From Podarcis erhardii (taxonomy: Eukaryota), in assembly GCA_964252035.1 (NCBI GenBank), contig OZ176204.1: DNA of 64,000 nucleotides; one strand, 5' to 3'. The position numbers and the translations under genes are program-made. This document shows, one piece after another, positions 15,105-63,436 of this stretch; position 1 is the stretch's first letter; every line of letters starts with the position of its first letter. The notes below the pieces were generated by a model. That model saw only the letters and a program-made list of their open reading frames with translations, was not told where the DNA came from and did no database searches.

Positions 15105-15471
15105 CACCCAAACAGTGGCGCTGTAGGTAAAAGCCTCAGCGCCTAGGGCTTGCCGATCGAAAGGTCGGCGGTTCGAATCCCCGCGGCGGGGTGCGCTCCC
15201 GTCGTTCAGTCCCAGCGCCTGCCAACCTAGCAGTTCGAAAGCACCCCCGGGTGCAAGTAGATAAATAGGGACCGCTTACCAGCGGGAAGGTAAACGGCGT
15301 TTCCGTGTGCTGCGCTGGCTCGCCAGATGCAGCTTTGTCACGCTGGCCACGTGACCCGGAAGTGTCTGCGGACAGCGCTGGCCCCCGGCCTCTTGAGTGA
15401 GATGGGCGCACCAACCCCAGAGTCTGTAAAGACTGGCCCGTACGGGCAGGGGTACCTTTACCTTTACCTTA
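15105..15471 (+). mobile_element. Full-length young Sauria SINE (Squam1)
   Basis: tRNA-like head (GTGGCGCTGTAGG; GGTTCGAATCC), central CCTGCCAACCTAGCAGTTCGAAAGCAC, 3' (ACCTTT)n tail; CpGs largely intact; possible AGCAGCA TSD. Confidence 0.93.
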
Positions 15472-18513: not shown

Positions 18514-18607
18514 AACGCCAGCTCCCTCAGCCAGTAAAGCAAGATGAGCACCGCAACCCCAGAGTCGTTCACGACTGGACTTAACTGCCAGGGGTCCCTT
18601 TACCTTT
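18514..18607 (+). mobile_element. 5'-truncated Sauria SINE
   Basis: GCTCCCTCAGCCAGTAAAGCAAGATGAGCACCGCAACCCCAGAGTC...GGGGTCCCTTTACCTTT; matches the reverse complement of 23644-23740. Confidence 0.85.
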
Positions 18608-19283
18608 TTTATTCATAACGAAGTACAAGCTGCAACATAAGAAGTGGCCCCCAAATCTGGGCCAGCAGAGAAAATCAGACTCTCAGGCTGCAGCAGCTGT
18701 GCATACAGAGGACTGCTAGCCATGAGCCCCACCATCCAGCGATTTCCCACAAACAAGAGTTACCTAATGCTATCCATTTTCAAGTGCAACTATTTTCAAT
18801 TAAAACTTATATAGCCTGGCACAGAGAAGCTGAGCTTGAAGAGAATGCAGCTACCTTTTCAAGAGTTAAGATACCTATGTAAAGTACACTTCAAATTAGA
18901 AACAGATTGATTCCTGGGCAGAAAAAGGCTGTAAACGGTGTAGGGGATTATTTCAATCACAAGGCAGGCAGTCTCAGCCAAGAACCACAAGCGGAGATAA
19001 GTGAAAGGGTGTTGCAGGTTTGCACTGAACAGCAACCTCAAATTCCAGCCACAAATGTATTTTCAGACTGATGAACGATGGAAGCATTTTTAAGGCACAA
19101 AAAAGGGAATGGTTTGAAGGAGATCTGTGCAGTTCAGCAAATCAGTCTTAGGTTTGTGCATGTATCTCCATTTATTGGGCTAACCCTGGATAGACCCCAA
19201 CAGCCCTACAGCTCCCTTCCCTCTTTCTCTTGTAGCAACTCTATGCTAGCTTCCTCTCACAGCATGCTTTCCTAGGCTTAGGC

Positions 19284-19595
19284 CAGGGGCCAGCAAACTT
19301 TTTCAGCAGGGGGCCAGTCCACTGTCCCTCAGACCTTGTGGGGGGCCATACCATGGGGGGGGGAATGAATGAATTCCTATGCCCAACAAATAACCCAGAG
19401 ATGCATTAAAAAAAACAACAACACACACGTGTAAAAACACCAGACAGGCCCCACAAATCACCCAGAAATGCATTTTTAATAAAAGGACACATTCTACTCA
19501 TGTAAAAACACACTGATTCCCGGACTGTCCGCCGGCCGGATTGAGAAGGCGATTGGGCTGGATCCGGACCCTGGGCCTTAGTTTGCTAACCCATG
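19284..19595. mobile_element. hAT MITE, copy 1 of a tandem pair (with internal ~70 bp duplication)
   Basis: TIRs CAGGGGCCAGCAAAC ... GTTTGCTAACCCATG; homologous to 19602-19851 and 33332-33466. Confidence 0.85.
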
Positions 19596-19601
19596 CTCTA
19601 A

Positions 19602-19851
19602 CAGGAGTCAGCAACCTTTTTCAGCAGGGGGCCAGTCCACTGTCCCTCAGACCTTGTGGGGGGCCAGACTATATATTGAAGAAGAAAAAGAACTAATTCC
19701 TATGCCCCACAAATAACCCAGAGATGCTTTTTAAATAAAAGCACACATTCTACTCATGTAAAAACATGCTGATTCCCGGACCGTTCATGGGCTGGATTGA
19801 GAAGGTGACTGGGCCGCATTCGGCCCATGGGCCTTAGTTTGCCTACCCATG
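19602..19851. mobile_element. hAT MITE, copy 2 of a tandem pair
   Basis: TIRs CAGGAGTCAGCAACC ... GTTTGCCTACCCATG; same orientation as copy 1. Confidence 0.85.
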
Positions 19852-20063
19852 GTTTAGGCTGTCCCAACATTCATCCTGGACATGCACCCCCACTACCACC
19901 TCCACCCAGTTCACCAATGTGTTATCTTCTCCATTGCCCCTATTTCCTTAATGAATGTGACCTGTTTTAACACTACTACTGTTTGCCATGTTGCTAGTTT
20001 CCAGAGTCCCAAATTACCTCTCCACAGATTTGCAAAAATGGCTGGAGAGGCTAGAACTAAAGC

Positions 20064-20090
20064 TATATATATATATATATATATATATAT
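20064..20090. repeat. (TA)n, left flank of PLE
   Basis: Direct reading. Confidence 0.95.
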
Positions 20091-20750
20091 GCAGGTTTTG
20101 GTGTCCTCGGGTGTCTTCCCGTGTAAAAGTTGGGGTGTCTAGGCGACGTTTCGACGAGGTCTCACTCGTCATCTTCAGGCTGGTGCTTTCGGCTTCTTGT
20201 TACTGGAACAGAGCAGGATCTCAGTGTTTGAGTTCCTATAAATACTGTAGAGGGGGTGTGGTGTATAGCCTCCAATGTTCTGGGCAGAGAGGAAGTTCCC
20301 AGGCTAGTGTGCCTTTTCTTCTTTTGTTCCTTAATTACTTGAGAGATATCTTGAGTGATTTCTTGAGTGATATCCTGAGTACCACTTAGGTGGGTCATTA
20401 GGTGTGGATTAGTTGTTAAAGTCTTTGTGTCTTGACCTCTTGAACTTTGTGAAGAGTTTTCCTGAGAAGATGGCTGTACTGTACTTAGTTGTGCTCTGGC
20501 TTGGCTTCGTGTATAGGGGCGAGCTGTGGTTTTGTGGCTTGTGTCAGCCAGATCTGTGTAGGGATTGCAGGGGGGTGCAGCATCCGGAGGTGCCACCATG
20601 GATTGGCTACTGGATGGTGTCTGTAATTCATCTGTGGAGAGGGTCTGGGTTTGGGTCTGGTGTGGTTGATTGGTGTTGGCGTTCTGTGTGCCTCTGGATC
20701 TGGTGTCAGTTTTTGTACCCGTCAGCCTGTACCCGTGAAAATCTACGAAA

Positions 20751-20752
<2 letters not shown>
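20091..20752 (-). mobile_element. Penelope-like element 3' fragment (Poseidon-type, inferred) inserted in an (AT)n tract
   Basis: Low-complexity T/Q/S/P-rich reading frame open across the fragment and ending ...HQPEDDE* inside the CTGAAGATG...CGAAACGTC motif typical of PLE pseudo-LTRs; flanked by (TA)n 20064-20090 and (AT)n 20753-20796. No RT or GIY-YIG domain present. Confidence 0.8.
20139..20185 (-). ncRNA. Minimal type I hammerhead ribozyme motif within the PLE
   Basis: Minus strand: CUGAAGA (20178-20172), U, stem II GACGAG/CUCGUC with UGAGAC loop, GAAAC, GUC cleavage triplet (20147-20145). Stem III is palindromic ACGU; stem I is weak (2 canonical bp). Confidence 0.7.

Positions 20753-20796
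<44 letters not shown>
20753..20796. repeat. (AT)22, right flank of PLE
   Basis: Direct reading. Confidence 0.97.
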
Positions 20797-20799
<3 letters not shown>

Positions 20800-23643
20800 T
20801 GCAGCAGGAGTGAGGGTGGTTTCCAAGTCAAAAATTCCCTCCGTTCTATTGACATGATAACCTTGCATTTATCAGTCAGTACTTTCTAGCATTCCTCTGG
20901 AGCTACTGCCAATTTGCTTCTCATCTCTCGCCATTAAGCTTAAAGGTAAGTGTGTGGAGTAATTGAGACCTGAATTTCGCAAACTGGGTCCCTTAAGGCT
21001 ACTGGCTTTCATCAGATCCAGAGTGCTGTCCCAAAACATACACAATGAAATAATTTTTGAATAATATTGTTACAGGAGAAAAACTGAGGGAACCATCATG
21101 GGGCAAGCTTTCCACCTGTCTTGCCCCACCTCAACCCCTGCCTGAGATTCTTATAAGGAAGACATACTGAAGTATTTACTCTTGTTCTCGCTAGCATTTT
21201 TCTGGGGACTGCACTTTGCCTTGTGGGCATGAACATGCATGTATTTGGTCTTAATATTTTTTGACATTTTAAAATTTAGGTTTGAATCGTCGTTTGTATT
21301 GTTTGTGTCTGAAAAAAGGCCTTGGGGCCCCCTTTTTTGGCCAAATGGTGGCATATTAATAAACAGTAATAAAACATAACAAAAAGCTCTTCTCAAGCCA
21401 TTTTCTGAAGGAACAGAATGGCCTTCCAAAGTCCACCAGGGATAATCCTCATTGGCCTGTTTTGGGAAACAAACTGTAGCAAGTCTCATTCTTGCACTGT
21501 CTTCCTCTTTCATTCACTAGCAGAAGAAACCAAAAGCATATGGTTCCAGTTTTAAGCAAACCATAGATCCCCATTGCAGTTGAACTCTGTTAACATTGGT
21601 TGGTTCAAACCATAGTTAGCAAGAGGCTGATTTCAAGTCATATTTTCACAAATGTAAATAACACTGCATACTTTACTCCAATTGCAAAATTTAAAGGTTT
21701 TTGTACTGCAATCTCTACGGCACAACCTCCGATCCAAAGCAGTTACAATAATTCAAAATAAATATCACCTGTCTAGTCGGCAATCAGATAAAGGTGGTCT
21801 AGCTAGGAGCAACACTAGCCGAGAAGCTGAGGACATGAAATATTAAGGGGTACAAAGAATTTCCTACACTACTAGATGGAAAGAGACAGTGCTTGCTGAT
21901 TCATACTGCCGTTATTCCAATTTCAAATTATCTAGTTTCTCTTGTCCTCTTATTACACTTATCAGCCAAATAAAATAAACAGTGATGCAGAGAACAATGG
22001 CCTTAATAGCTTAATGAGCAGAGTGTCTTGAAAAGTACAGTGAAGAGCCTTCCTCAGCTATCAGAGTCATTGAGACTAAAATAAACTTCCAAGTCCTTGG
22101 AATCTGGAGACTGTTGCATGATAAACATGTGAGTCAACTGTTTCCAACAGGCTTCGTAGCTGGCTAGGCAGAGCCTGTTGCACCAGCCTAACTCTTTATA
22201 TTAGGATGCATTGACCTTGCAGTTTCATAATCAATGATCTGGGACTGTTCAAAAATTTTTCAAGACAAGGCCCCAGAAATATTTCCCAGTTTTAAGGCAT
22301 CTTAAATCAAAGATGAGTGGAGTGTTGAATTTGCCACCTATGTCCAAATATCACCCAATATAAATGAGATTCTGTTCAACTCCTCTACACTGGACACATT
22401 ATCTATCCAGCTACCACTAAGCATACACACATACTTTAATATGTATTATATCACCCATACACTGTCTCTATAGTGTCCAGAAAGATAGGAAAGGTTATAC
22501 ACAACAGACAAGGACTCTGATTTTCACCATGGCAACCAGCTTATTTATAATGTGGCCTACCTTCATCAAAGCACAGCAAAAAAAACACAAACCTAAATGC
22601 AAGTGTAGTGGTACATTCAAGTACTGAGATGAAGAAGCTTGCATAAGCATGTAAATGAACTGCTTCCATTACATTATATGTACAATTATTAGCATTTACT
22701 CTTGGATATTCCTTCTCCTTTTTAGCCCAGGTAAAAGTAATAGGGAGAAAAAATAATTATTAAAGGTTCAAGTACATATCTGCATCAAAGGTAGGAGACC
22801 TCCTTAGAGTGCTTGCTTTTAAAAGGGACAACTTCAGCACTGGAAAGGGAAGATATAGAAGATGGTGGTTAGGCAGCAGGGAAGCAGGTAGATACAGTGA
22901 CATGTTCCTTACAGGAATCAGAAATAAAAAAGATGATCTATCCATGAGAAACTACATTGTGTCTGGCACAAAACTTCTGGGATTTCAAGCGAAAGCGTCT
23001 ATTTCAAGGCAAGTAACACCAAATCACAAAAACTAATTGATACTGTTAATTGGAAACTACGCAAAGCATTTTCCAATGAAACTATTGTTTTACGTGAGTA
23101 GCTACTTCCTGGGATATTCAAAGTGGCAGCTTAACAAATCACGGATAGTAAAAATGTACTCACCCTATTATTTGTTTTGTCAACAACATGTCAGTAGCTT
23201 CTTCTGACTGGTTCTAAGTCTTAGCATATAGAATGTGTGAACACTCAGGGAAAAGCACAAGCTTTCTTAAGAGATAATCCTTTGTGAAAAGGTGCATAAA
23301 CAACCTTTCCATATGAAAGAAATGAGTCAGAAAGCAGGGGAAAGGTCTACCAGGATTTCTTTATACTGACTGATCTAACAAAAAAAGAAATACAATTAGG
23401 TTTCTGAAGAATTTCTCTCTCTACTACTGTAAATAAGTTGGTAATTGTATAACACCAATCTCTGTTTGTTGCTTTTTGGCTTTAAGATATTCTAATCAAC
23501 AGGAAACTTCCTAATCTCTTTGTTCTGGTCAGACATTAAGACAAGATACTAAAAGGAGTGATAAAAATCGGGTGTGATCAACCAAACTCTAGATGTGGAG
23601 GTTACTGGAAGTTAATATATTTTCAAGTGATGAGTTTCTTACT

Positions 23644-23878
23644 TAAAGGTAAAGGTAAAGGGACCCCTGACCATTAGGTCCAGTAGTGGCTCTGGGGTTG
23701 CGGCGCTCATCTTGCTTTATTGGCTGAGGGAGCCGGCGTACAGCTTCCGGGTCATGTGGCCAGCATGACTAAGCCGCTTCTGGCGAACCAGAGCAGCACA
23801 CAGAAACGCTGTTTACCTTCCCGTCGGAGTGGTACCTATTTATCTACTTGCACTTTGACGTGCTTTCGAACTGCTAGG
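23644..23878 (-). mobile_element. 5'-truncated Sauria SINE
   Basis: Starts TAAAGGTAAAGGTAAAGGGACCCCTG (tail, reverse complement) and extends to TTTCGAACTGCTAGG. Confidence 0.92.
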
Positions 23879-34272: not shown

Positions 34273-36420
34273 CTTCCTCATTGCTTAGTCTGCTCCTCCA
34301 GGCACACTTAGGTGCAATCCACTGCCACTGAGAACTGACACAGGAGCCTGAATTGCACTTCTCAAGCCACCCACTGGCACTAACACATCCATTTTCTTCT
34401 TTCAGGAGGGCAAAGAACTGTGGCCTTCCACATGGGAGAAGTGTAGAATTTCTAACTACTCAATAGTCATAAAATACTTTAACATTCTAAACCAAAGCTC
34501 AGAAACTGGCCTAGGCCCAAATGTGAAATTCAATCATCGGGGGGGGGGGGTCCTTTATTTATTTGTTAAAATGGAGCAACCGAAGGACTTGCAATAAGTG
34601 TGCAGAATGTGAAAACGAAAGACAAGCAGATGAAGCGATAACAGTGCAAAGTGTTTTGCGTATCTTTTCATACAGATGGCTTTGAAAACTCATAACATGG
34701 TTGTATATAAAAAGAGCATAAGATTTCTCGGCAATAATGGCATGGCGGTATTATTTTAATCAACTTCTATAAGCAAACCAGACAAGTGGGATGGGTATCA
34801 CATACTTATTAATTGGGACAGATAATTTTCAGATGTTTATTGAGCCTATAAAAACATGCTCCTGCAGTTAATGAAGGAAACCTTCTAGCCCTGAAAGGCC
34901 AAAGTCTAACATTCTAACAAGTAGGCTGAAGGCTGTAAAATGGAAATAAAGTCTTCCGTGACAGGAATTTCTTGTACATAAAAGAAGCTGACATGGAACA
35001 AAATAGCGCAACTGGCAACAGATTCCTCATCTGACTGCCACTAATTTCATGCCTATCAATGAGCTGGAGAATTCCAAGATCCTTCCCCTCTGGAACCTTT
35101 TGTCCCAGCACCCCAGGAAGATAAATTAGGTCATATGTTATGCCCTTTTCCCTCCCAGCTCTTGTTAACCAAATATTGGCCACATGGATCACACCAGCCA
35201 ATACCAAAAGCATAAGCTGACCATTATTTGAAGGGGGAGGGAGAATTAGATTAGATGCTGCTTTCATTTCATGGAAAAAGATATTATCTAAAACTTTTAA
35301 AAGAACCAAAATGTTGAATAACACTATAAAATGCATGAAGGGCAAATGTTTTAGAGAGAGAGGGCTCACGATTAAGAGCAAAAGTACACAAGTAGAGATG
35401 ATTTAAGAGGATGATTTTTACTGTTGCATATGGCGGCTGAACAGCAAAGAGTAAACATGATTAGTGTCTAGCAAAGCTCATCAGCACTTTTATAGCTTTA
35501 GGTTTAATTAAAACAACAATGGTGCTGGGATCTGAAGAAATTAAAGAGACATAGTTGAAATAATGCCTTTCTAGCATGACATTCTCCCTAGGGAGGCAAA
35601 GAGGAAAAGGGTTGGCTTAAACAGCAGGATGGGGGGGGGGGAGAGATAATGGGCATGGAACTATGAATTCTACCATCACATTTCTAAAATACGTGTGCAA
35701 AGCAATCCTAAGCATTTTTATTTAGATGCAAGAACCCTCTTTGGGAGAAGTGGCTGGAGGCCCATGTAGGACAACATTCCAGTCTTAAAAGCAGTCTGCA
35801 GAGACTCATTTCAGCGATGCTTTGCCTGAGTCACCCAATGACCCCATCCCAAGCACTGTCTTGATTCCTTATTCTTCCCCATTATCCCTTCAGTTGTGTG
35901 AGTAAAGGTGGCAGCAGACTAGACAGAAACGCCACAGTCAGAGAAAGGATGCCCCTTTAGCTGCCAGACAGTTCTACCAGCAGGGATCTAATTTGGGAGG
36001 AGGCATCTGCTCTGAAGGGTCTACTTGGGAGGAAGCAGAACACCCAGCTGCAAGCAATGACCCAAGAGAAGACCAGGTAGAGACAAACACTATATAAATT
36101 TCTCGGTCTCATTTTGTTCTTTACATTGCTATTAGCTCTCTATGGGTCTCATGTATGCTATAGCTCAGTCTATATCATTGACTCAGGCTCCAGCCTCTAC
36201 ACTCAAGTAGTGGTCAGAGAAACTTCCCCCAAGCAAATCATGAACTATAATCCAGGTACCAACCATGAGGCCAGGCTTGGACATCACAACACGCTATGTT
36301 TTCCATCAGAGCAGCCGTACCAAGAACAGGGCAGAAGTGGAGCAAGAACTTTTCAGCAGGTGCACCAGCACACTGTGTGTTCGCATTAAACCATAGTTCT
36401 TGGTAATAAAAAGTTTAATC

Positions 36421-39816: not shown

Positions 39817-40108
39817 NNNNNNNNNNNNNNNNNNNNNNNNNNNNNNNNNNNNNNNNNNNNNNNNNNNNNNNNNNNNNNNNNNNNNNNNNNNNNNNNNNNN
39901 NNNNNNNNNNNNNNNNNNNNNNNNNNNNNNNNNNNNNNNNNNNNNNNNNNNNNNNNNNNNNNNNNNNNNNNNNNNNNNNNNNNNNNNNNNNNNNNNNNNN
40001 NNNNNNNNNNNNNNNNNNNNNNNNNNNNNNNNNNNNNNNNNNNNNNNNNNNNNNNNNNNNNNNNNNNNNNNNNNNNNNNNNNNNNNNNNNNNNNNNNNNN
40101 NNNNNNNN
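39817..40108. other. Assembly gap (292 N)
   Basis: Run of N. Confidence 1.
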
Positions 40109-61300: not shown

Positions 61301-61495
61301 GGTCTTAAAGTACACATATTCTTCCAGATGAGCCCAGTTGTTTTGGAATACAAATATATATTCCTTTCAAGTGAAGGCTTGTTTCTTTATATAATGCTTT
61401 TAACTTTTGTTTGTTAATGGGAAGGCAGTGTCTGTTTGCAGGATTGCATTTGCCTTTTCTATACTATGTCCTGACTCTGCTGAGCCAAGCACAAC

Positions 61496-61498
<3 letters not shown>

Positions 61499-61543
<45 letters not shown>
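61499..61543. repeat. (AT)22 microsatellite
   Basis: Direct reading. Confidence 0.97.
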
Positions 61544-61544
<1 letters not shown>

Positions 61545-62425
61545 CTTCGATATTTTCTTCCCAACACAATAAACATGGGGGCCACATCCACTATCTTCTT
61601 ATGGAAGCCATACATGTGATCTATTTAAATGGAAGCTGGTGACTTTAAGGAAAGCCAGTGTGCCAAGGAATGAAAATAAAAATTTCTCGCCCCTTCCAAA
61701 AGAAAGATGCCAAAAAATTCTTACACAGAATAGAAGGAAGAGAAAACTGGGGATGGGGGAGAAAGCTGTCTATAGTTAACTGCCACCCTTTAAATCTTTT
61801 AAACACAAAGAGTCCTAAAGTTTTTTAAACAAAAACAAAACCCGGATAAGATTTTACACCAATTAATCACTCGATGGCAACGCTGCCAGTAAATTAGTAA
61901 CTCGGGAAGGTTTCAGCAAGCGAGCAAAGGGTTAAAAGGGGGAGGCAAGGAAAGGGGGAGGGGAGAGAAAGGAAACCCAGTCGCCACTCGAGAGCGGAGA
62001 AGGAAAACAGAGCGCGATAGGAATCGCAAAAAGAGTTTTGTGGGAAGGAGAGCGGAGGAGGCTCGCTTGCTGGGCGCGGGGGGGGGGGATTCAAAAGCGG
62101 GAGCTGGGACTCCGGGTGCCCTTCGCCCTGCCAAGTCCCAGGCCGAAGCCCCGAAGCCCCAAAACTGAAAGTAAAGGAATCAACATGGCGAAGTGTAAAC
62201 AGCCCCTTTCTCTGCCCTCCCCCCGCCCCCTCGGCGCGCAGGCAGCGGAAGGCGCAAAAGTTTTGGAAAGTTTCAGGCAGCGCCGCGGCGGCCGGGAGCG
62301 GAGGGGGCGGGCGGCACAGGCGGCAGGGGGACCTGGGCGGGTGGGGGACGCAAATGCGCGGAAAACACAGCTCGCATTTCCAGATATATACTGTATCTCT
62401 GTACATATGCACACGTTCGACTTAC

Positions 62426-62550
62426 CGTTCTTGCCGTGGGCGAGAGGGAGCCATTGGGAAGGTAGGGGCCGGTCAGGTCGGGGATCATTATAAAGGGATA
62501 CCCAGGATATGGTGGGCCCTTGAACAACCCTCCATCTTGCCTTTTCGCAG
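62426..62550 (-). CDS. TCF7L2: TCF7L2 coding exon 3 (125 bp)
   Basis: gttag|CT acceptor at 62551; encodes (A)[41 protein letters not shown]; donor ACG|GTAAGT at 62425. Intron 2 = 227 bp. Confidence 0.98.
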
Positions 62551-62777
62551 CTAACATGGCGGGGGAACGAGGCACAAGGAGAGAGAAAACAGAAAGCAGG
62601 GGGGAAATCACGGTTAGAAAAAGTGCTTCGCGAAACTTGGAAGAGCATTTCTTTGCGCAAACGGAGAGCACGGTTTTGGGGGTGCTCCAGCTCCGCGCGC
62701 TCTCCCCCCCCCTCCACCACCCTGGAAAGGGGAAGGGGAAGGGGGTGGGTGGGATGGAGCCATCAAGCACAACTTAC

Positions 62778-62844: not shown

Positions 62845-63247
62845 CTTGGATCAAAAGAGGGTGGAAAATAGCCAAAAAATAAAATAAAAGGGCACCGGGA
62901 GAGTAGATGAATGAGGCAGTTTGGGGAAATAAAAGAAGGAAGGAGGAGAGAGAAAAAGAGAAGGGGGAGAGAACAAGTTAGAAGTTTGTGCAAAACTTGA
63001 TACGGAAAATACAGAGATAACTGAACCCACCAGAGAAGCAACAGGGCAGTCGCCGACCATACTATAAGAAACAGAGTTGCAACTCCGGGCGAAAGCTCAG
63101 TTCCCCCACCCCCTCCATGGCATTTTTCTCTCTTCTCCCCACCCCCACCCCCAACTTCTTGCATCCCGTCTCCCCGGGAACCCCCAAGGTGGAGTAAGGC
63201 AGGTGTGCTGCAAAGAGCGGCGGCGGGGCGAGGGGGGGTCTCCTTAC

Positions 63248-63436
63248 CTCCGAGTCTGAAGAGCTGTTTTGATTCGTTTCTGTTTCATTGACTAGCGACG
63301 ATTTGACATCGGCTAAATCCCTCTCCGCCGACGAGTTCTCCGAAATCTTCTCTTCTTGCTCCCCTTCGTCTTTAAAAGAGATCAATTCATCGTTCGCCCC
63401 CAAATCGTCCCCTCCACCGCCATTTAGTTGCGGCAT
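63248..63436 (-). CDS. TCF7L2: TCF7L2 coding exon 1 (189 bp, aa 1-63, beta-catenin-binding domain)
   Basis: Translates [63 protein letters not shown], near-identical to the vertebrate TCF7L2 N-terminus; ends GAG|GTAAGG (donor at 63247). Confidence 0.98.

What the first reader, a model, noticed from the sequence alone, without database searches (positions are those of the whole stretch)
20139..20185. Hammerhead ribozyme core sense to the TCF7L2 pre-mRNA
Seen: the minus strand reads CCAGC-CUGAAGA-U-GACGAG-UGAGAC-CUCGUC-GAAAC-GUC-GCCUAG. This has the full hammerhead core, a perfect 6-bp stem II and a GUC triplet, with predicted cleavage between 20145 and 20144. Established: PLE pseudo-LTRs carry minimal type I hammerheads whose palindromic stem III (here ACGU) is thought to form by dimerisation. 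Inference: TCF7L2 is also transcribed from the minus strand, so each nascent transcript contains this motif ~42 kb into the intron. It could be cut by trans-dimerisation with another TCF7L2 or PLE RNA, letting TE RNA gate a Wnt-pathway gene. Caveat: stem I has only 2 canonical pairs (G-C, C-G), so this copy may be weak or dead.
Basis: partly seen in the sequence, partly recalled or inferred. Interest (0 to 1): 0.72.

Follow-up and report, generated by a model that had tools for sequence, protein, structure and literature searches.

The report
Penelope retrotransposon hammerhead in TCF7L2 intron
The hammerhead-ribozyme motif is real, but it is the standard minimal ribozyme carried by a truncated copy of a very abundant lizard Penelope-like retrotransposon that landed in a (TA)n microsatellite inside a TCF7L2 intron, and nothing indicates that it cuts or regulates the host gene's RNA.

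Summary
Observation confirmed. The minus strand at 20183-20139 carries CUGAAGA, one unpaired U, a perfect 6-bp helix II closed by G10.1-C11.1, GAAA, a loop-less palindromic ACGU and a GUC cut site. No shuffle reproduced it. No Rfam model scores it.

It is an ordinary minimal hammerhead of a Penelope-like element (PLE). The 660-bp insert (20091-20750) lies between two (TA)n tracts. Its long open frame is 96% identical to the C-terminal tail of a protein that carries the PLE GIY-YIG endonuclease. A9-U-G10.1 forms an AUG that opens a second frame, as in the studied Anolis element Poseidon_Ac. The insert ends 82 nt after that AUG, which fits the internal start of reverse transcription known for PLEs. 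The family is extremely abundant in three lizard DNA data sets.

TCF7L2 does run on the minus strand, and the cut site is 42.3 kb into the intron.

The gating idea has no support:
- No partner hammerhead lies on that strand in the window.
- Nearest-neighbour energies disfavour the active dimer.
- Published single minimal hammerheads do not cleave.
- Family RNA reads show no ends piling up.
- The locus had no RNA reads, so it could not be tested directly.

This scan has already noted many PLE hammerheads elsewhere in this genome. Interest is low.

The parts
20139..20185 (-). Minimal type I hammerhead motif: helix I 5' strand, CUGAAGA core, unpaired U20171, 6-bp helix II with a 6-nt loop, GAAA, loop-less palindrome ACGU (20149-20146), GUC, helix I 3' strand. 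The predicted cut is after C20145.
   Evidence: hallmarks as listed in PMC4209133
20165..20716 (-). 3' part of the PLE ORF: the disordered C-terminal tail that follows the GIY-YIG endonuclease. It is open for 184 family codons. The stop UGA (20164-20162) lies in hammerhead loop II.
   Evidence: open frame; 176/184 identical to P0005 residues 185-368, E 5e-126; GIY-YIG in P0005 and P0004; loose-end consensus at 20716 encodes LPDIWKLALP
20091..20172 (-). AUG formed by A9-U-G10.1, followed by 27 open codons up to the 3' junction with (TA)n. Read as the start of the next PLE unit's ORF, ending at the element's reverse-transcription start region.
   Evidence: same layout in Poseidon_Ac
20717..20750 (-). 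34 nt at the 5' end of the insert that do not follow the family sequence. Possibly the PLE 'tail' or filler.
   Evidence: Similarity to the 3' end is not significant.
20064..20090 (.). (TA)13.5 microsatellite flanking the 3' end of the insert
20753..20796 (.). (AT)22 microsatellite flanking the 5' end of the insert. The two tracts are read as one split target microsatellite.
   Evidence: (TA)n target preference of PLEs in PMC8557442
62426..62550 (-). TCF/LEF exon ending ...SPTART with a GTAAGT donor. It is the upstream boundary of the intron that holds the insert. Its 5' limit is approximate.
63248..63436 (-). TCF/LEF first coding exon (beta-catenin-binding N-terminus). It fixes the host gene on the minus strand. 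Its 3' limit is approximate.
   Evidence: PF08347, E 5e-29

Best explanation
The motif is the minimal hammerhead ribozyme of a 5'-truncated Penelope-like retrotransposon copy (20091-20750, minus strand). The copy inserted into a (TA)n microsatellite in a large intron of TCF7L2 and happens to lie in the sense orientation. In this squamate PLE family the hammerhead sits at the joint between tandem units. The end of the RT-endonuclease ORF runs through helix I, the core and helix II, giving the C-terminus ...HQPEDDE with its stop in loop II. The next unit's AUG is formed by A9, the unpaired U and G10.1. Reverse transcription starts a short way into that next ORF, so every copy carries the ribozyme near its 3' end. 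Because helix III is only a loop-less palindrome, the ribozyme can reach an active fold only by pairing with a second copy, as in tandem read-through PLE transcripts. This insert is a solitary copy deep in an intron, so it is most likely an inert passenger, and TCF7L2 pre-mRNA is most likely not cut there. Shown here: the motif, the PLE identity, the (TA)n flanks, the high copy number, the orientation and the position in the intron. Inferred: inactivity in the host transcript.
For: [quoted passage not shown] The Poseidon_Ac consensus has the same layout across its tandem joint, and its ORF AUG falls at A9-U-G10.1. The open frame of the insert matches P0005 at 96% over 184 aa. P0005 and the related P0004 and P0006 carry GIY-YIG. 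DNA contigs of three runs continue past 20716 with a consensus that encodes LPDIWKLALP, which are the P0005 residues just before the tail. Word depth over 20084-20725 is 10^5-10^6, against 20-100 in the unique flanks, in the DNA of three organisms. (TA)n lies on both sides, and it is a known PLE target. The insert spans the cut site, so its template RNA was uncut. This fits the finding that cleavage is not needed for PAc insertion in vitro. Against any activity on the host: there is no second motif on the minus strand. The double-hammerhead fold scores -18 to -20 kcal/mol, against -23.2 for two monomers and -29.4 for a competing dimer. Single minimal hammerheads are inactive in vitro. Family RNA reads show no pile-up of ends and no drop in depth across the site.
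Against: No RNA read covered the unique intron flanks, so cleavage at this locus was not tested. The RNA run comes from another organism (G), which may or may not carry this insertion. The PAc hammerhead has only a 3-bp helix I, yet it cleaves in vitro at 500 nM RNA with PAc protein present, so a weak helix I does not prove the motif dead. Family RNA is present in cells on both strands, so a trans partner exists in principle. Nearest-neighbour energies ignore tertiary contacts and protein chaperones. Conservation of the ribozyme is therefore seen only through the invariant HQPEDDE peptide.
Confidence: 0.87

Rival explanations
1. The sense-oriented hammerhead in nascent TCF7L2 RNA pairs through ACGU and helix I with a PLE transcript or another TCF7L2 transcript. 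It is then cut 42 kb into the intron, so that TE RNA levels tune TCF7L2 output.
For: The motif is intact and sense to the gene. Transcripts of the same family are present in an RNA run. A related lizard PLE hammerhead cleaves in vitro. Conserved intronic hammerheads exist in other amniote genes.
Against: The intermolecular contact is only 4 bp plus 2 bp per helix I. The active dimer is predicted to be less stable than the free monomers. Single minimal hammerheads are inactive and dimers are slow, mostly at unphysiological Mg2+. No read ends were seen at the cut site in family RNA here or in Anolis. HHR-bearing PLE copies are noted many times in this genome, and in Xenopus about 43% of retrozyme copies lie in introns, so this locus is not special. 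There is no evidence that the insertion is conserved.
Confidence: 0.02
2. The insert affects TCF7L2 by another route. It could be exonised as an alternative terminal exon through a cryptic acceptor inside the element, or it could supply a PLE promoter that starts intronic transcripts.
For: In Podarcis muralis an annotated translin-associated factor X isoform (P0001, UniProt A0A670HLY4) ends in 105 residues read from a copy of this same element. It uses the same frame, down to the stop in the hammerhead loop. The TCF7L2 copy has the same orientation relative to its gene.
Against: P0001 is a single automatic gene model. The RNA run gave no reads in the flanks and no junction reads were listed for the element. 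Splice phase and acceptor strength were not examined.
Confidence: 0.05
3. Chance occurrence of a hammerhead-like string in non-repetitive intron sequence.
For: There is no Rfam hit. Helix I is weak.
Against: 0 of 300 and 0 of 100 shuffles reproduce it. It lies in a recognised PLE copy, exactly where PLEs carry their hammerhead.
Confidence: 0.005

Closest known systems
Minimal hammerheads (min-HHR) of metazoan Penelope-like elements (Cervera and De la Pena 2014, PMC4209133)
   Same: [quoted passage not shown] There is no helix III hairpin, only a palindromic 15.2-16.2. Helix I is short and poorly defined. It lies in a PLE, and such motifs were reported in reptiles.
   Different: Helix I has 2 contiguous pairs here, against the usual 4-5 (Drosophila virilis Penelope also has 2). 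Cleavage was not tested.
Poseidon_Ac (PAc) of Anolis carolinensis and its hammerhead (Frangieh et al. 2024, PMC11167929)
   Same: It is a lizard PLE whose hammerhead spans the tandem joint. The ORF start codon is A9-U-G10.1. The cut site is 25 nt (here) or 26 nt (PAc) after the start codon. The element's 3' end is set by reverse transcription starting inside the next ORF, 82 nt in here and 111-118 nt in PAc. The endonuclease C-terminus is homologous (...EAIEI.KH..N.N...IW..L, compared by eye).
   Different: It belongs to a different family. Here the ORF has a tail of about 185 residues that runs into the ribozyme and stops in loop II, whereas in PAc the ORF stops 126 nt before the hammerhead. 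The flanks here are (TA)n. The loop and stem sequences are unrelated.
Conserved intronic hammerheads of amniotes (RECK, CTCL, DTNB; reviewed in PMC6155905)
   Same: It is a type I hammerhead lying in an intron, sense to the host pre-mRNA, and probably of retroelement origin.
   Different: Those are complete ribozymes with three helices and tertiary loop contacts. They are conserved at orthologous positions over long evolutionary spans and are found by Rfam models. This one lacks helix III, sits in a young high-copy TE copy, and shows no evidence of conservation at the locus.
Animal non-LTR retrozymes (bioRxiv 10.64898/2026.07.22.740005)
   Same: They carry PLE-derived hammerheads, and dispersed monomer copies are common, many of them in introns.
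   Different: Retrozymes are short non-coding tandem units. This insert is a truncated piece of an autonomous PLE with ORF sequence, and it is not tandem.

Membership tests
Hammerhead ribozyme, PLE minimal type I (min-HHR) | Catalytic core C3-U4-G5-A6-N7-G8-A9 and G12-A13-A14, with an NUH cleavage triplet | tested here: met
   CUGAAGA, GAAA and GUC are all present.
Hammerhead ribozyme, PLE minimal type I (min-HHR) | [quoted passage not shown] | tested here: met
   GACGAG pairs with CUCGUC over 6 bp, and U20171 is unpaired.
Hammerhead ribozyme, PLE minimal type I (min-HHR) | No loop 3, with a palindromic 15.2-16.2 that allows a dimeric helix III | tested here: met
   A15.1-C-G-U16.1 reads ACGU at 20149-20146.
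Hammerhead ribozyme, PLE minimal type I (min-HHR) | Helix I of about 4-5 bp | tested here: not met
   There are only 2 contiguous canonical pairs. D. virilis Penelope (2 bp) and PAc (3 bp) are similarly short, so this does not exclude membership.
Hammerhead ribozyme, PLE minimal type I (min-HHR) | Self-cleavage at the predicted site | not testable with these tools
   Family-level RNA reads show no pile-up of ends. There were no reads at the locus.
Rfam hammerhead families (Hammerhead_1, _3, HH9, HH10, II) | Score at or above the gathering threshold | tested here: not met
   There was no hit at gathering score and none at E<=10.
Penelope-like element insertion | [quoted passage not shown] | tested here: inconclusive
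   This copy is truncated after the EN domain. Its remaining 184 codons are 96% identical to the tail of P0005, which carries GIY-YIG. The related P0006 shows RT C-terminal motifs plus GIY-YIG. No full-length element was recovered.
Penelope-like element insertion | Hammerhead at the tandem joint or pLTR, near the 3' end of copies | tested here: met
   The cut site is 54 nt from the 3' junction, and the layout matches Poseidon_Ac.
Penelope-like element insertion | Microsatellite target, (TA)n in the Neptune and Naiad clades | tested here: met
   (TA)13.5 and (AT)22 flank the insert. The preference is described.
Penelope-like element insertion | Optional 30-40 bp 'tail' at one end | tested here: inconclusive
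   34 nt of non-family sequence lie at 20717-20750. They have no significant match to the 3' end.
Domesticated intronic hammerhead (RECK/CTCL/DTNB type) | Complete three-helix ribozyme conserved at the orthologous intron position across species | tested here: not met
   There is no helix III. Orthologous presence could not be resolved, because contigs of all runs break at the (TA)n tracts.

The most novel reading that the evidence does not exclude
Abundant sense PLE transcripts in lizard cells could act as trans partners for the many solitary sense-oriented minimal hammerheads in introns. They would form double hammerheads that occasionally sever host pre-mRNAs, TCF7L2 among them. TE expression would then dampen a set of host genes.
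Probability: 0.02. Interest if true: 0.8.

Novelty: new member of a known kind. Interest (0 to 1): 0.13.

Why it matters
As it stands, this is routine repeat annotation: one more copy of a known ribozyme-bearing retrotransposon in an intron. Two details are mildly useful for people who study PLEs.

- In this squamate family the hammerhead is read in two frames. It encodes the last residues of the RT-endonuclease protein (HQPEDDE, with the stop in loop II) and the AUG of the next unit. That terminal peptide is invariant between families that are only about 40% identical elsewhere.
- The copy spans the cut site and ends 82 nt into the next ORF. This is a genomic trace of the uncut-template, internal-initiation mechanism shown in vitro for Poseidon_Ac.

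Only direct evidence of cleavage in nascent TCF7L2 RNA would make the locus itself interesting.

Tried and rejected
- **Rfam scans.** Both scans gave only microsatellite-driven noise.
- **Self-comparison of the window.** It found no second copy of the element.
- **Second descriptor hit.** The hit at +35532 has an AT-rich 5-bp stem, no G10.1-C11.1 pair and no helix III, and it is antisense to the gene. I judged it chance.
- **5' filler versus 3' end.** Similarity is not significant: 45 of 500 shuffles scored as well.
- **Fold of the 3'-terminal 54 nt.** It is no better than shuffles.
- **Protein searches that came back blank.** Pfam on the insert's frames gave nothing. The ESM Atlas gave no usable hit. 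The word search with the 145-aa ORF was blank, which says little because that search only sees proteins of similar length to the query. The PDB search with P0002 was blank.
- **Exact-pattern scan of metagenome contigs.** Zero hits.
- **Earlier-findings search by sequence.** Blank.
- **The look-up of encoding contigs.** No nucleotide alignment or covariation test of the family hammerhead was possible.
- **Presence or absence of the insert in related species.** This could not be read from the contigs, because all of them break at the (TA)n tracts.
- **N run at 39817-40108.** Left untouched.

Full report
**1. The observation**

In order it contains:
- CCAGC
- CUGAAGA (20178-20172)
- a single U (20171)
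- GACGAG, loop UGAGAC and CUCGUC (a perfect 6-bp hairpin, 20170-20153)
- GAAAC, GUC (C17 = 20145) and GCCUAG

The pattern CTGANGA-N(8-30)-GAAACGTC occurs once in 64 kb, with 0.00 expected from shuffles. I wrote a descriptor requiring the core, an optional bulge, a helix II of at least 4 bp and a palindromic helix III followed by UH. It recovers the site. None of 300 shuffled windows gave a motif of equal quality.

Rfam gives no hammerhead hit at gathering score or at E<=10 on a 1.1-kb slice. That is expected, because the motif has no helix III hairpin.

**2. What the motif is**

Cervera and De la Pena (PMC4209133) defined the minimal hammerhead of metazoan Penelope-like elements (PLEs). They listed features that emerged without being built into their search:
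- a conserved G10.1-C11.1 pair
- a long helix II
- a palindromic 15.2-16.2 with no loop 3
- a short, poorly defined helix I

The window's motif has every one of these.

**3. The surrounding element**

The motif sits near the minus-strand 3' end of a 660-bp insert (20091-20750). The insert is bracketed by (TA)13.5 at 20064-20090 and (AT)22 at 20753-20796. (TA)n is a documented preferred target of PLE clades (PMC8557442).

One reading frame of the insert is open for 198 codons, from its 5' edge to a UGA in hammerhead loop II. The other two frames each carry about ten stops. Pfam, the ESM Atlas and a first word search were blank.

The full HMMER search found three relatives:
- P0001, a Podarcis muralis translin-associated factor X isoform whose last 105 residues are 93% identical to the frame
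- P0002, an unnamed 223-aa ENA protein (E 2.7e-11)
- P0003, a Micrurus spixii fragment

A word search seeded with P0002 then found Phrynocephalus forsythii proteins named GIY-YIG domain-containing. It also found P0005, a 368-aa protein from a Logan contig. P0005 has a GIY-YIG domain in its first half. Its last 184 residues match the window's frame at 176/184, with E 5e-126. P0006 additionally shows the RT C-terminal region ahead of the endonuclease.

There is independent support from DNA reads. Contigs of three sequencing runs that overlap the insert continue past 20716 with a 99%-consistent consensus. Its reverse complement encodes LPDIWKLALP, which are the P0005 residues immediately before the tail.

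The insert is therefore a PLE copy truncated at about 20714-20716, just after the endonuclease domain. It is preceded by 34 nt of non-family sequence (20717-20750). These may be the PLE 'tail' or filler. Their similarity to the 3' end is not significant.

**4. Comparison with the studied lizard PLE**

The Poseidon_Ac consensus (supplement of PMC11167929), read across its tandem joint, has the same layout. It runs CUGAGGA, an unpaired U, a 6-bp helix II starting with G and ending with C, a 7-nt loop, GAAAC and GUC. The ORF's AUG is A9-U-G10.1, and the cut falls 26 nt after the start codon.

Here A20172-U-G20170 is likewise an AUG. The cut is 25 nt after it, and the frame stays open for 27 codons until the (TA)n tract.

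Frangieh et al. showed that PAc reverse transcription starts inside the RNA, 111-118 nt into the ORF, and that this defines the ends of genomic copies. The window's copy ends 82 nt after its AUG, which is the same logic in a different family.

Because the copy contains sequence on both sides of the cut site, the RNA that templated it was not cleaved. This agrees with their finding that hammerhead cleavage is not needed for insertion in vitro.

One difference from PAc stands out. Here the ORF's long C-terminal tail runs through helix I, the core and the 5' strand of helix II, giving ...HQPEDDE. In PAc the ORF stops 126 nt earlier. HQPEDDE is invariant in P0001, P0002 and P0005, although P0002 is only about 41% identical overall. 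This is indirect evidence that the ribozyme sequence is constrained within the family.

**5. Abundance and RNA**

I laid three DNA runs and one RNA run on 18800-22000.
- **DNA depth.** The summed word depth over 20084-20725 is 10^5-10^6, against 20-100 in the unique flanks, in organisms A, B and G. The family is therefore very abundant in several related lizards. This depth is not a copy number.
- **Presence at this locus.** All contigs break at the (TA)n tracts, so presence or absence of this particular insertion in the relatives cannot be read.
- **RNA at the locus.** The raw-read RNA run (organism G, about 12% sampled) has no reads at all in the unique intron flanks. The locus was not tested.
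- **RNA from the family.** Reads at 90-99% identity cover the element on both strands, with more first mates on the + strand. Depth does not drop across the cut site, and the tool lists no place where molecules begin or end.

Frangieh et al. likewise found no read ends at the PAc cut site.

**6. Host gene**

ORFs on the minus strand at 63062-63436 and 62273-62770 contain the TCF/LEF N-terminal beta-catenin-binding domain (PF08347, E 5e-29 and 2e-11). The second exon ends at 62426 with a GTAAGT donor.

**7. Does it act on TCF7L2?**

Nothing suggests so.
- **No partner in cis.** A minimal hammerhead needs a partner, and the window's minus strand has no second motif even with two core mismatches allowed.
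- **Weak contact in trans.** Only ACGU/ACGU plus two pairs per helix I would hold two RNAs together.
- **Unfavourable energetics.** With ViennaRNA the double-hammerhead fold evaluates to -18.1 to -20.3 kcal/mol. Two free monomers give -23.2, and a competing dimer that pairs the palindromic CAG-C-CUG and buries part of the core gives -29.4. These are nearest-neighbour estimates that ignore tertiary contacts and proteins.
- **Published activity.** A single minimal hammerhead had no detectable cleavage. Dimers were slow and mostly needed unphysiological Mg2+.
- **The locus is not special.** Intronic copies of PLE-derived hammerhead units are commonplace: about 43% of Xenopus retrozyme copies lie in introns. 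This scan already holds 152 notes naming hammerhead and Penelope together in this genome.

The known regulatory-looking intronic hammerheads (RECK, CTCL, DTNB) are complete three-helix ribozymes conserved across amniotes. This motif is neither.

**8. Verdict**

It is an ordinary member of a known kind: the minimal hammerhead of a truncated, fairly young PLE copy (96% protein identity to another copy, frame intact). The gene-gating idea remains an untested speculation with the odds against it.

**9. Limits**
No nucleotide-level family alignment or covariation test was made.
- The comparison with Poseidon_Ac was done by eye from the paper's supplement.
- Cleavage was not tested.

Noticed in passing
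window 20165-20480 (-); protein P0001: A Podarcis muralis gene model for translin-associated factor X (UniProt A0A670HLY4) ends in 105 residues read from a copy of this same PLE tail. It uses the same frame, down to the stop in the hammerhead loop. Copies of this element can therefore be annotated, and perhaps used, as terminal exons. The TCF7L2 copy carries the equivalent ...acagtacag|CC site in sense orientation at about 20480.
   Followed up: partly
window 20162-20183 (-): In this PLE family the hammerhead is read in two frames. Helix I, the core and helix II encode the ORF's last residues HQPEDDE, with the stop in loop II. A9-U-G10.1 is the AUG of the next unit in another frame. The terminal peptide is invariant between families that are about 41% identical overall.
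   Followed up: partly
window 19228-19869: This is a very high-copy repeat (word depth 10^6 in three lizard DNA runs) with internal duplications of about 256-320 bp period. It is heavily represented in RNA reads on both strands. It looks SINE-like and is separate from the PLE insert.
   Followed up: no
window 15226-15470, 18515-18607 and 23646-23878: Three copies of another dispersed repeat ending in GGTAAAGGTAAAGG-like units. Two are in inverted orientation about 8 kb apart, with arms 85-94% complementary. They are probably squamate SINEs.
   Followed up: no
window 35532-35566 (+): A weak hammerhead-like string: CUGAAGA, a 5-bp AT-rich stem, then GAAAUA. It lacks a G10.1-C11.1 pair and a helix III, and it is antisense to TCF7L2. 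I judged it chance.
   Followed up: partly
window 61495-61557: A third long (TA)n tract lies in the same intron with no insert. It is an empty example of the kind of target used at 20064-20796.
   Followed up: partly
window 20338-20380 (-): A 12-nt unit repeated 3.6 times inside the PLE tail. It encodes the repeated TQDITQEITQDISQ stretch.
   Followed up: no
window 20236-20244 (-): A TATTTATAG string lies about 55 nt upstream of the hammerhead. Earlier notes of this scan propose a TATA-type promoter just ahead of PLE hammerheads in this genome. I did not test this.
   Followed up: no
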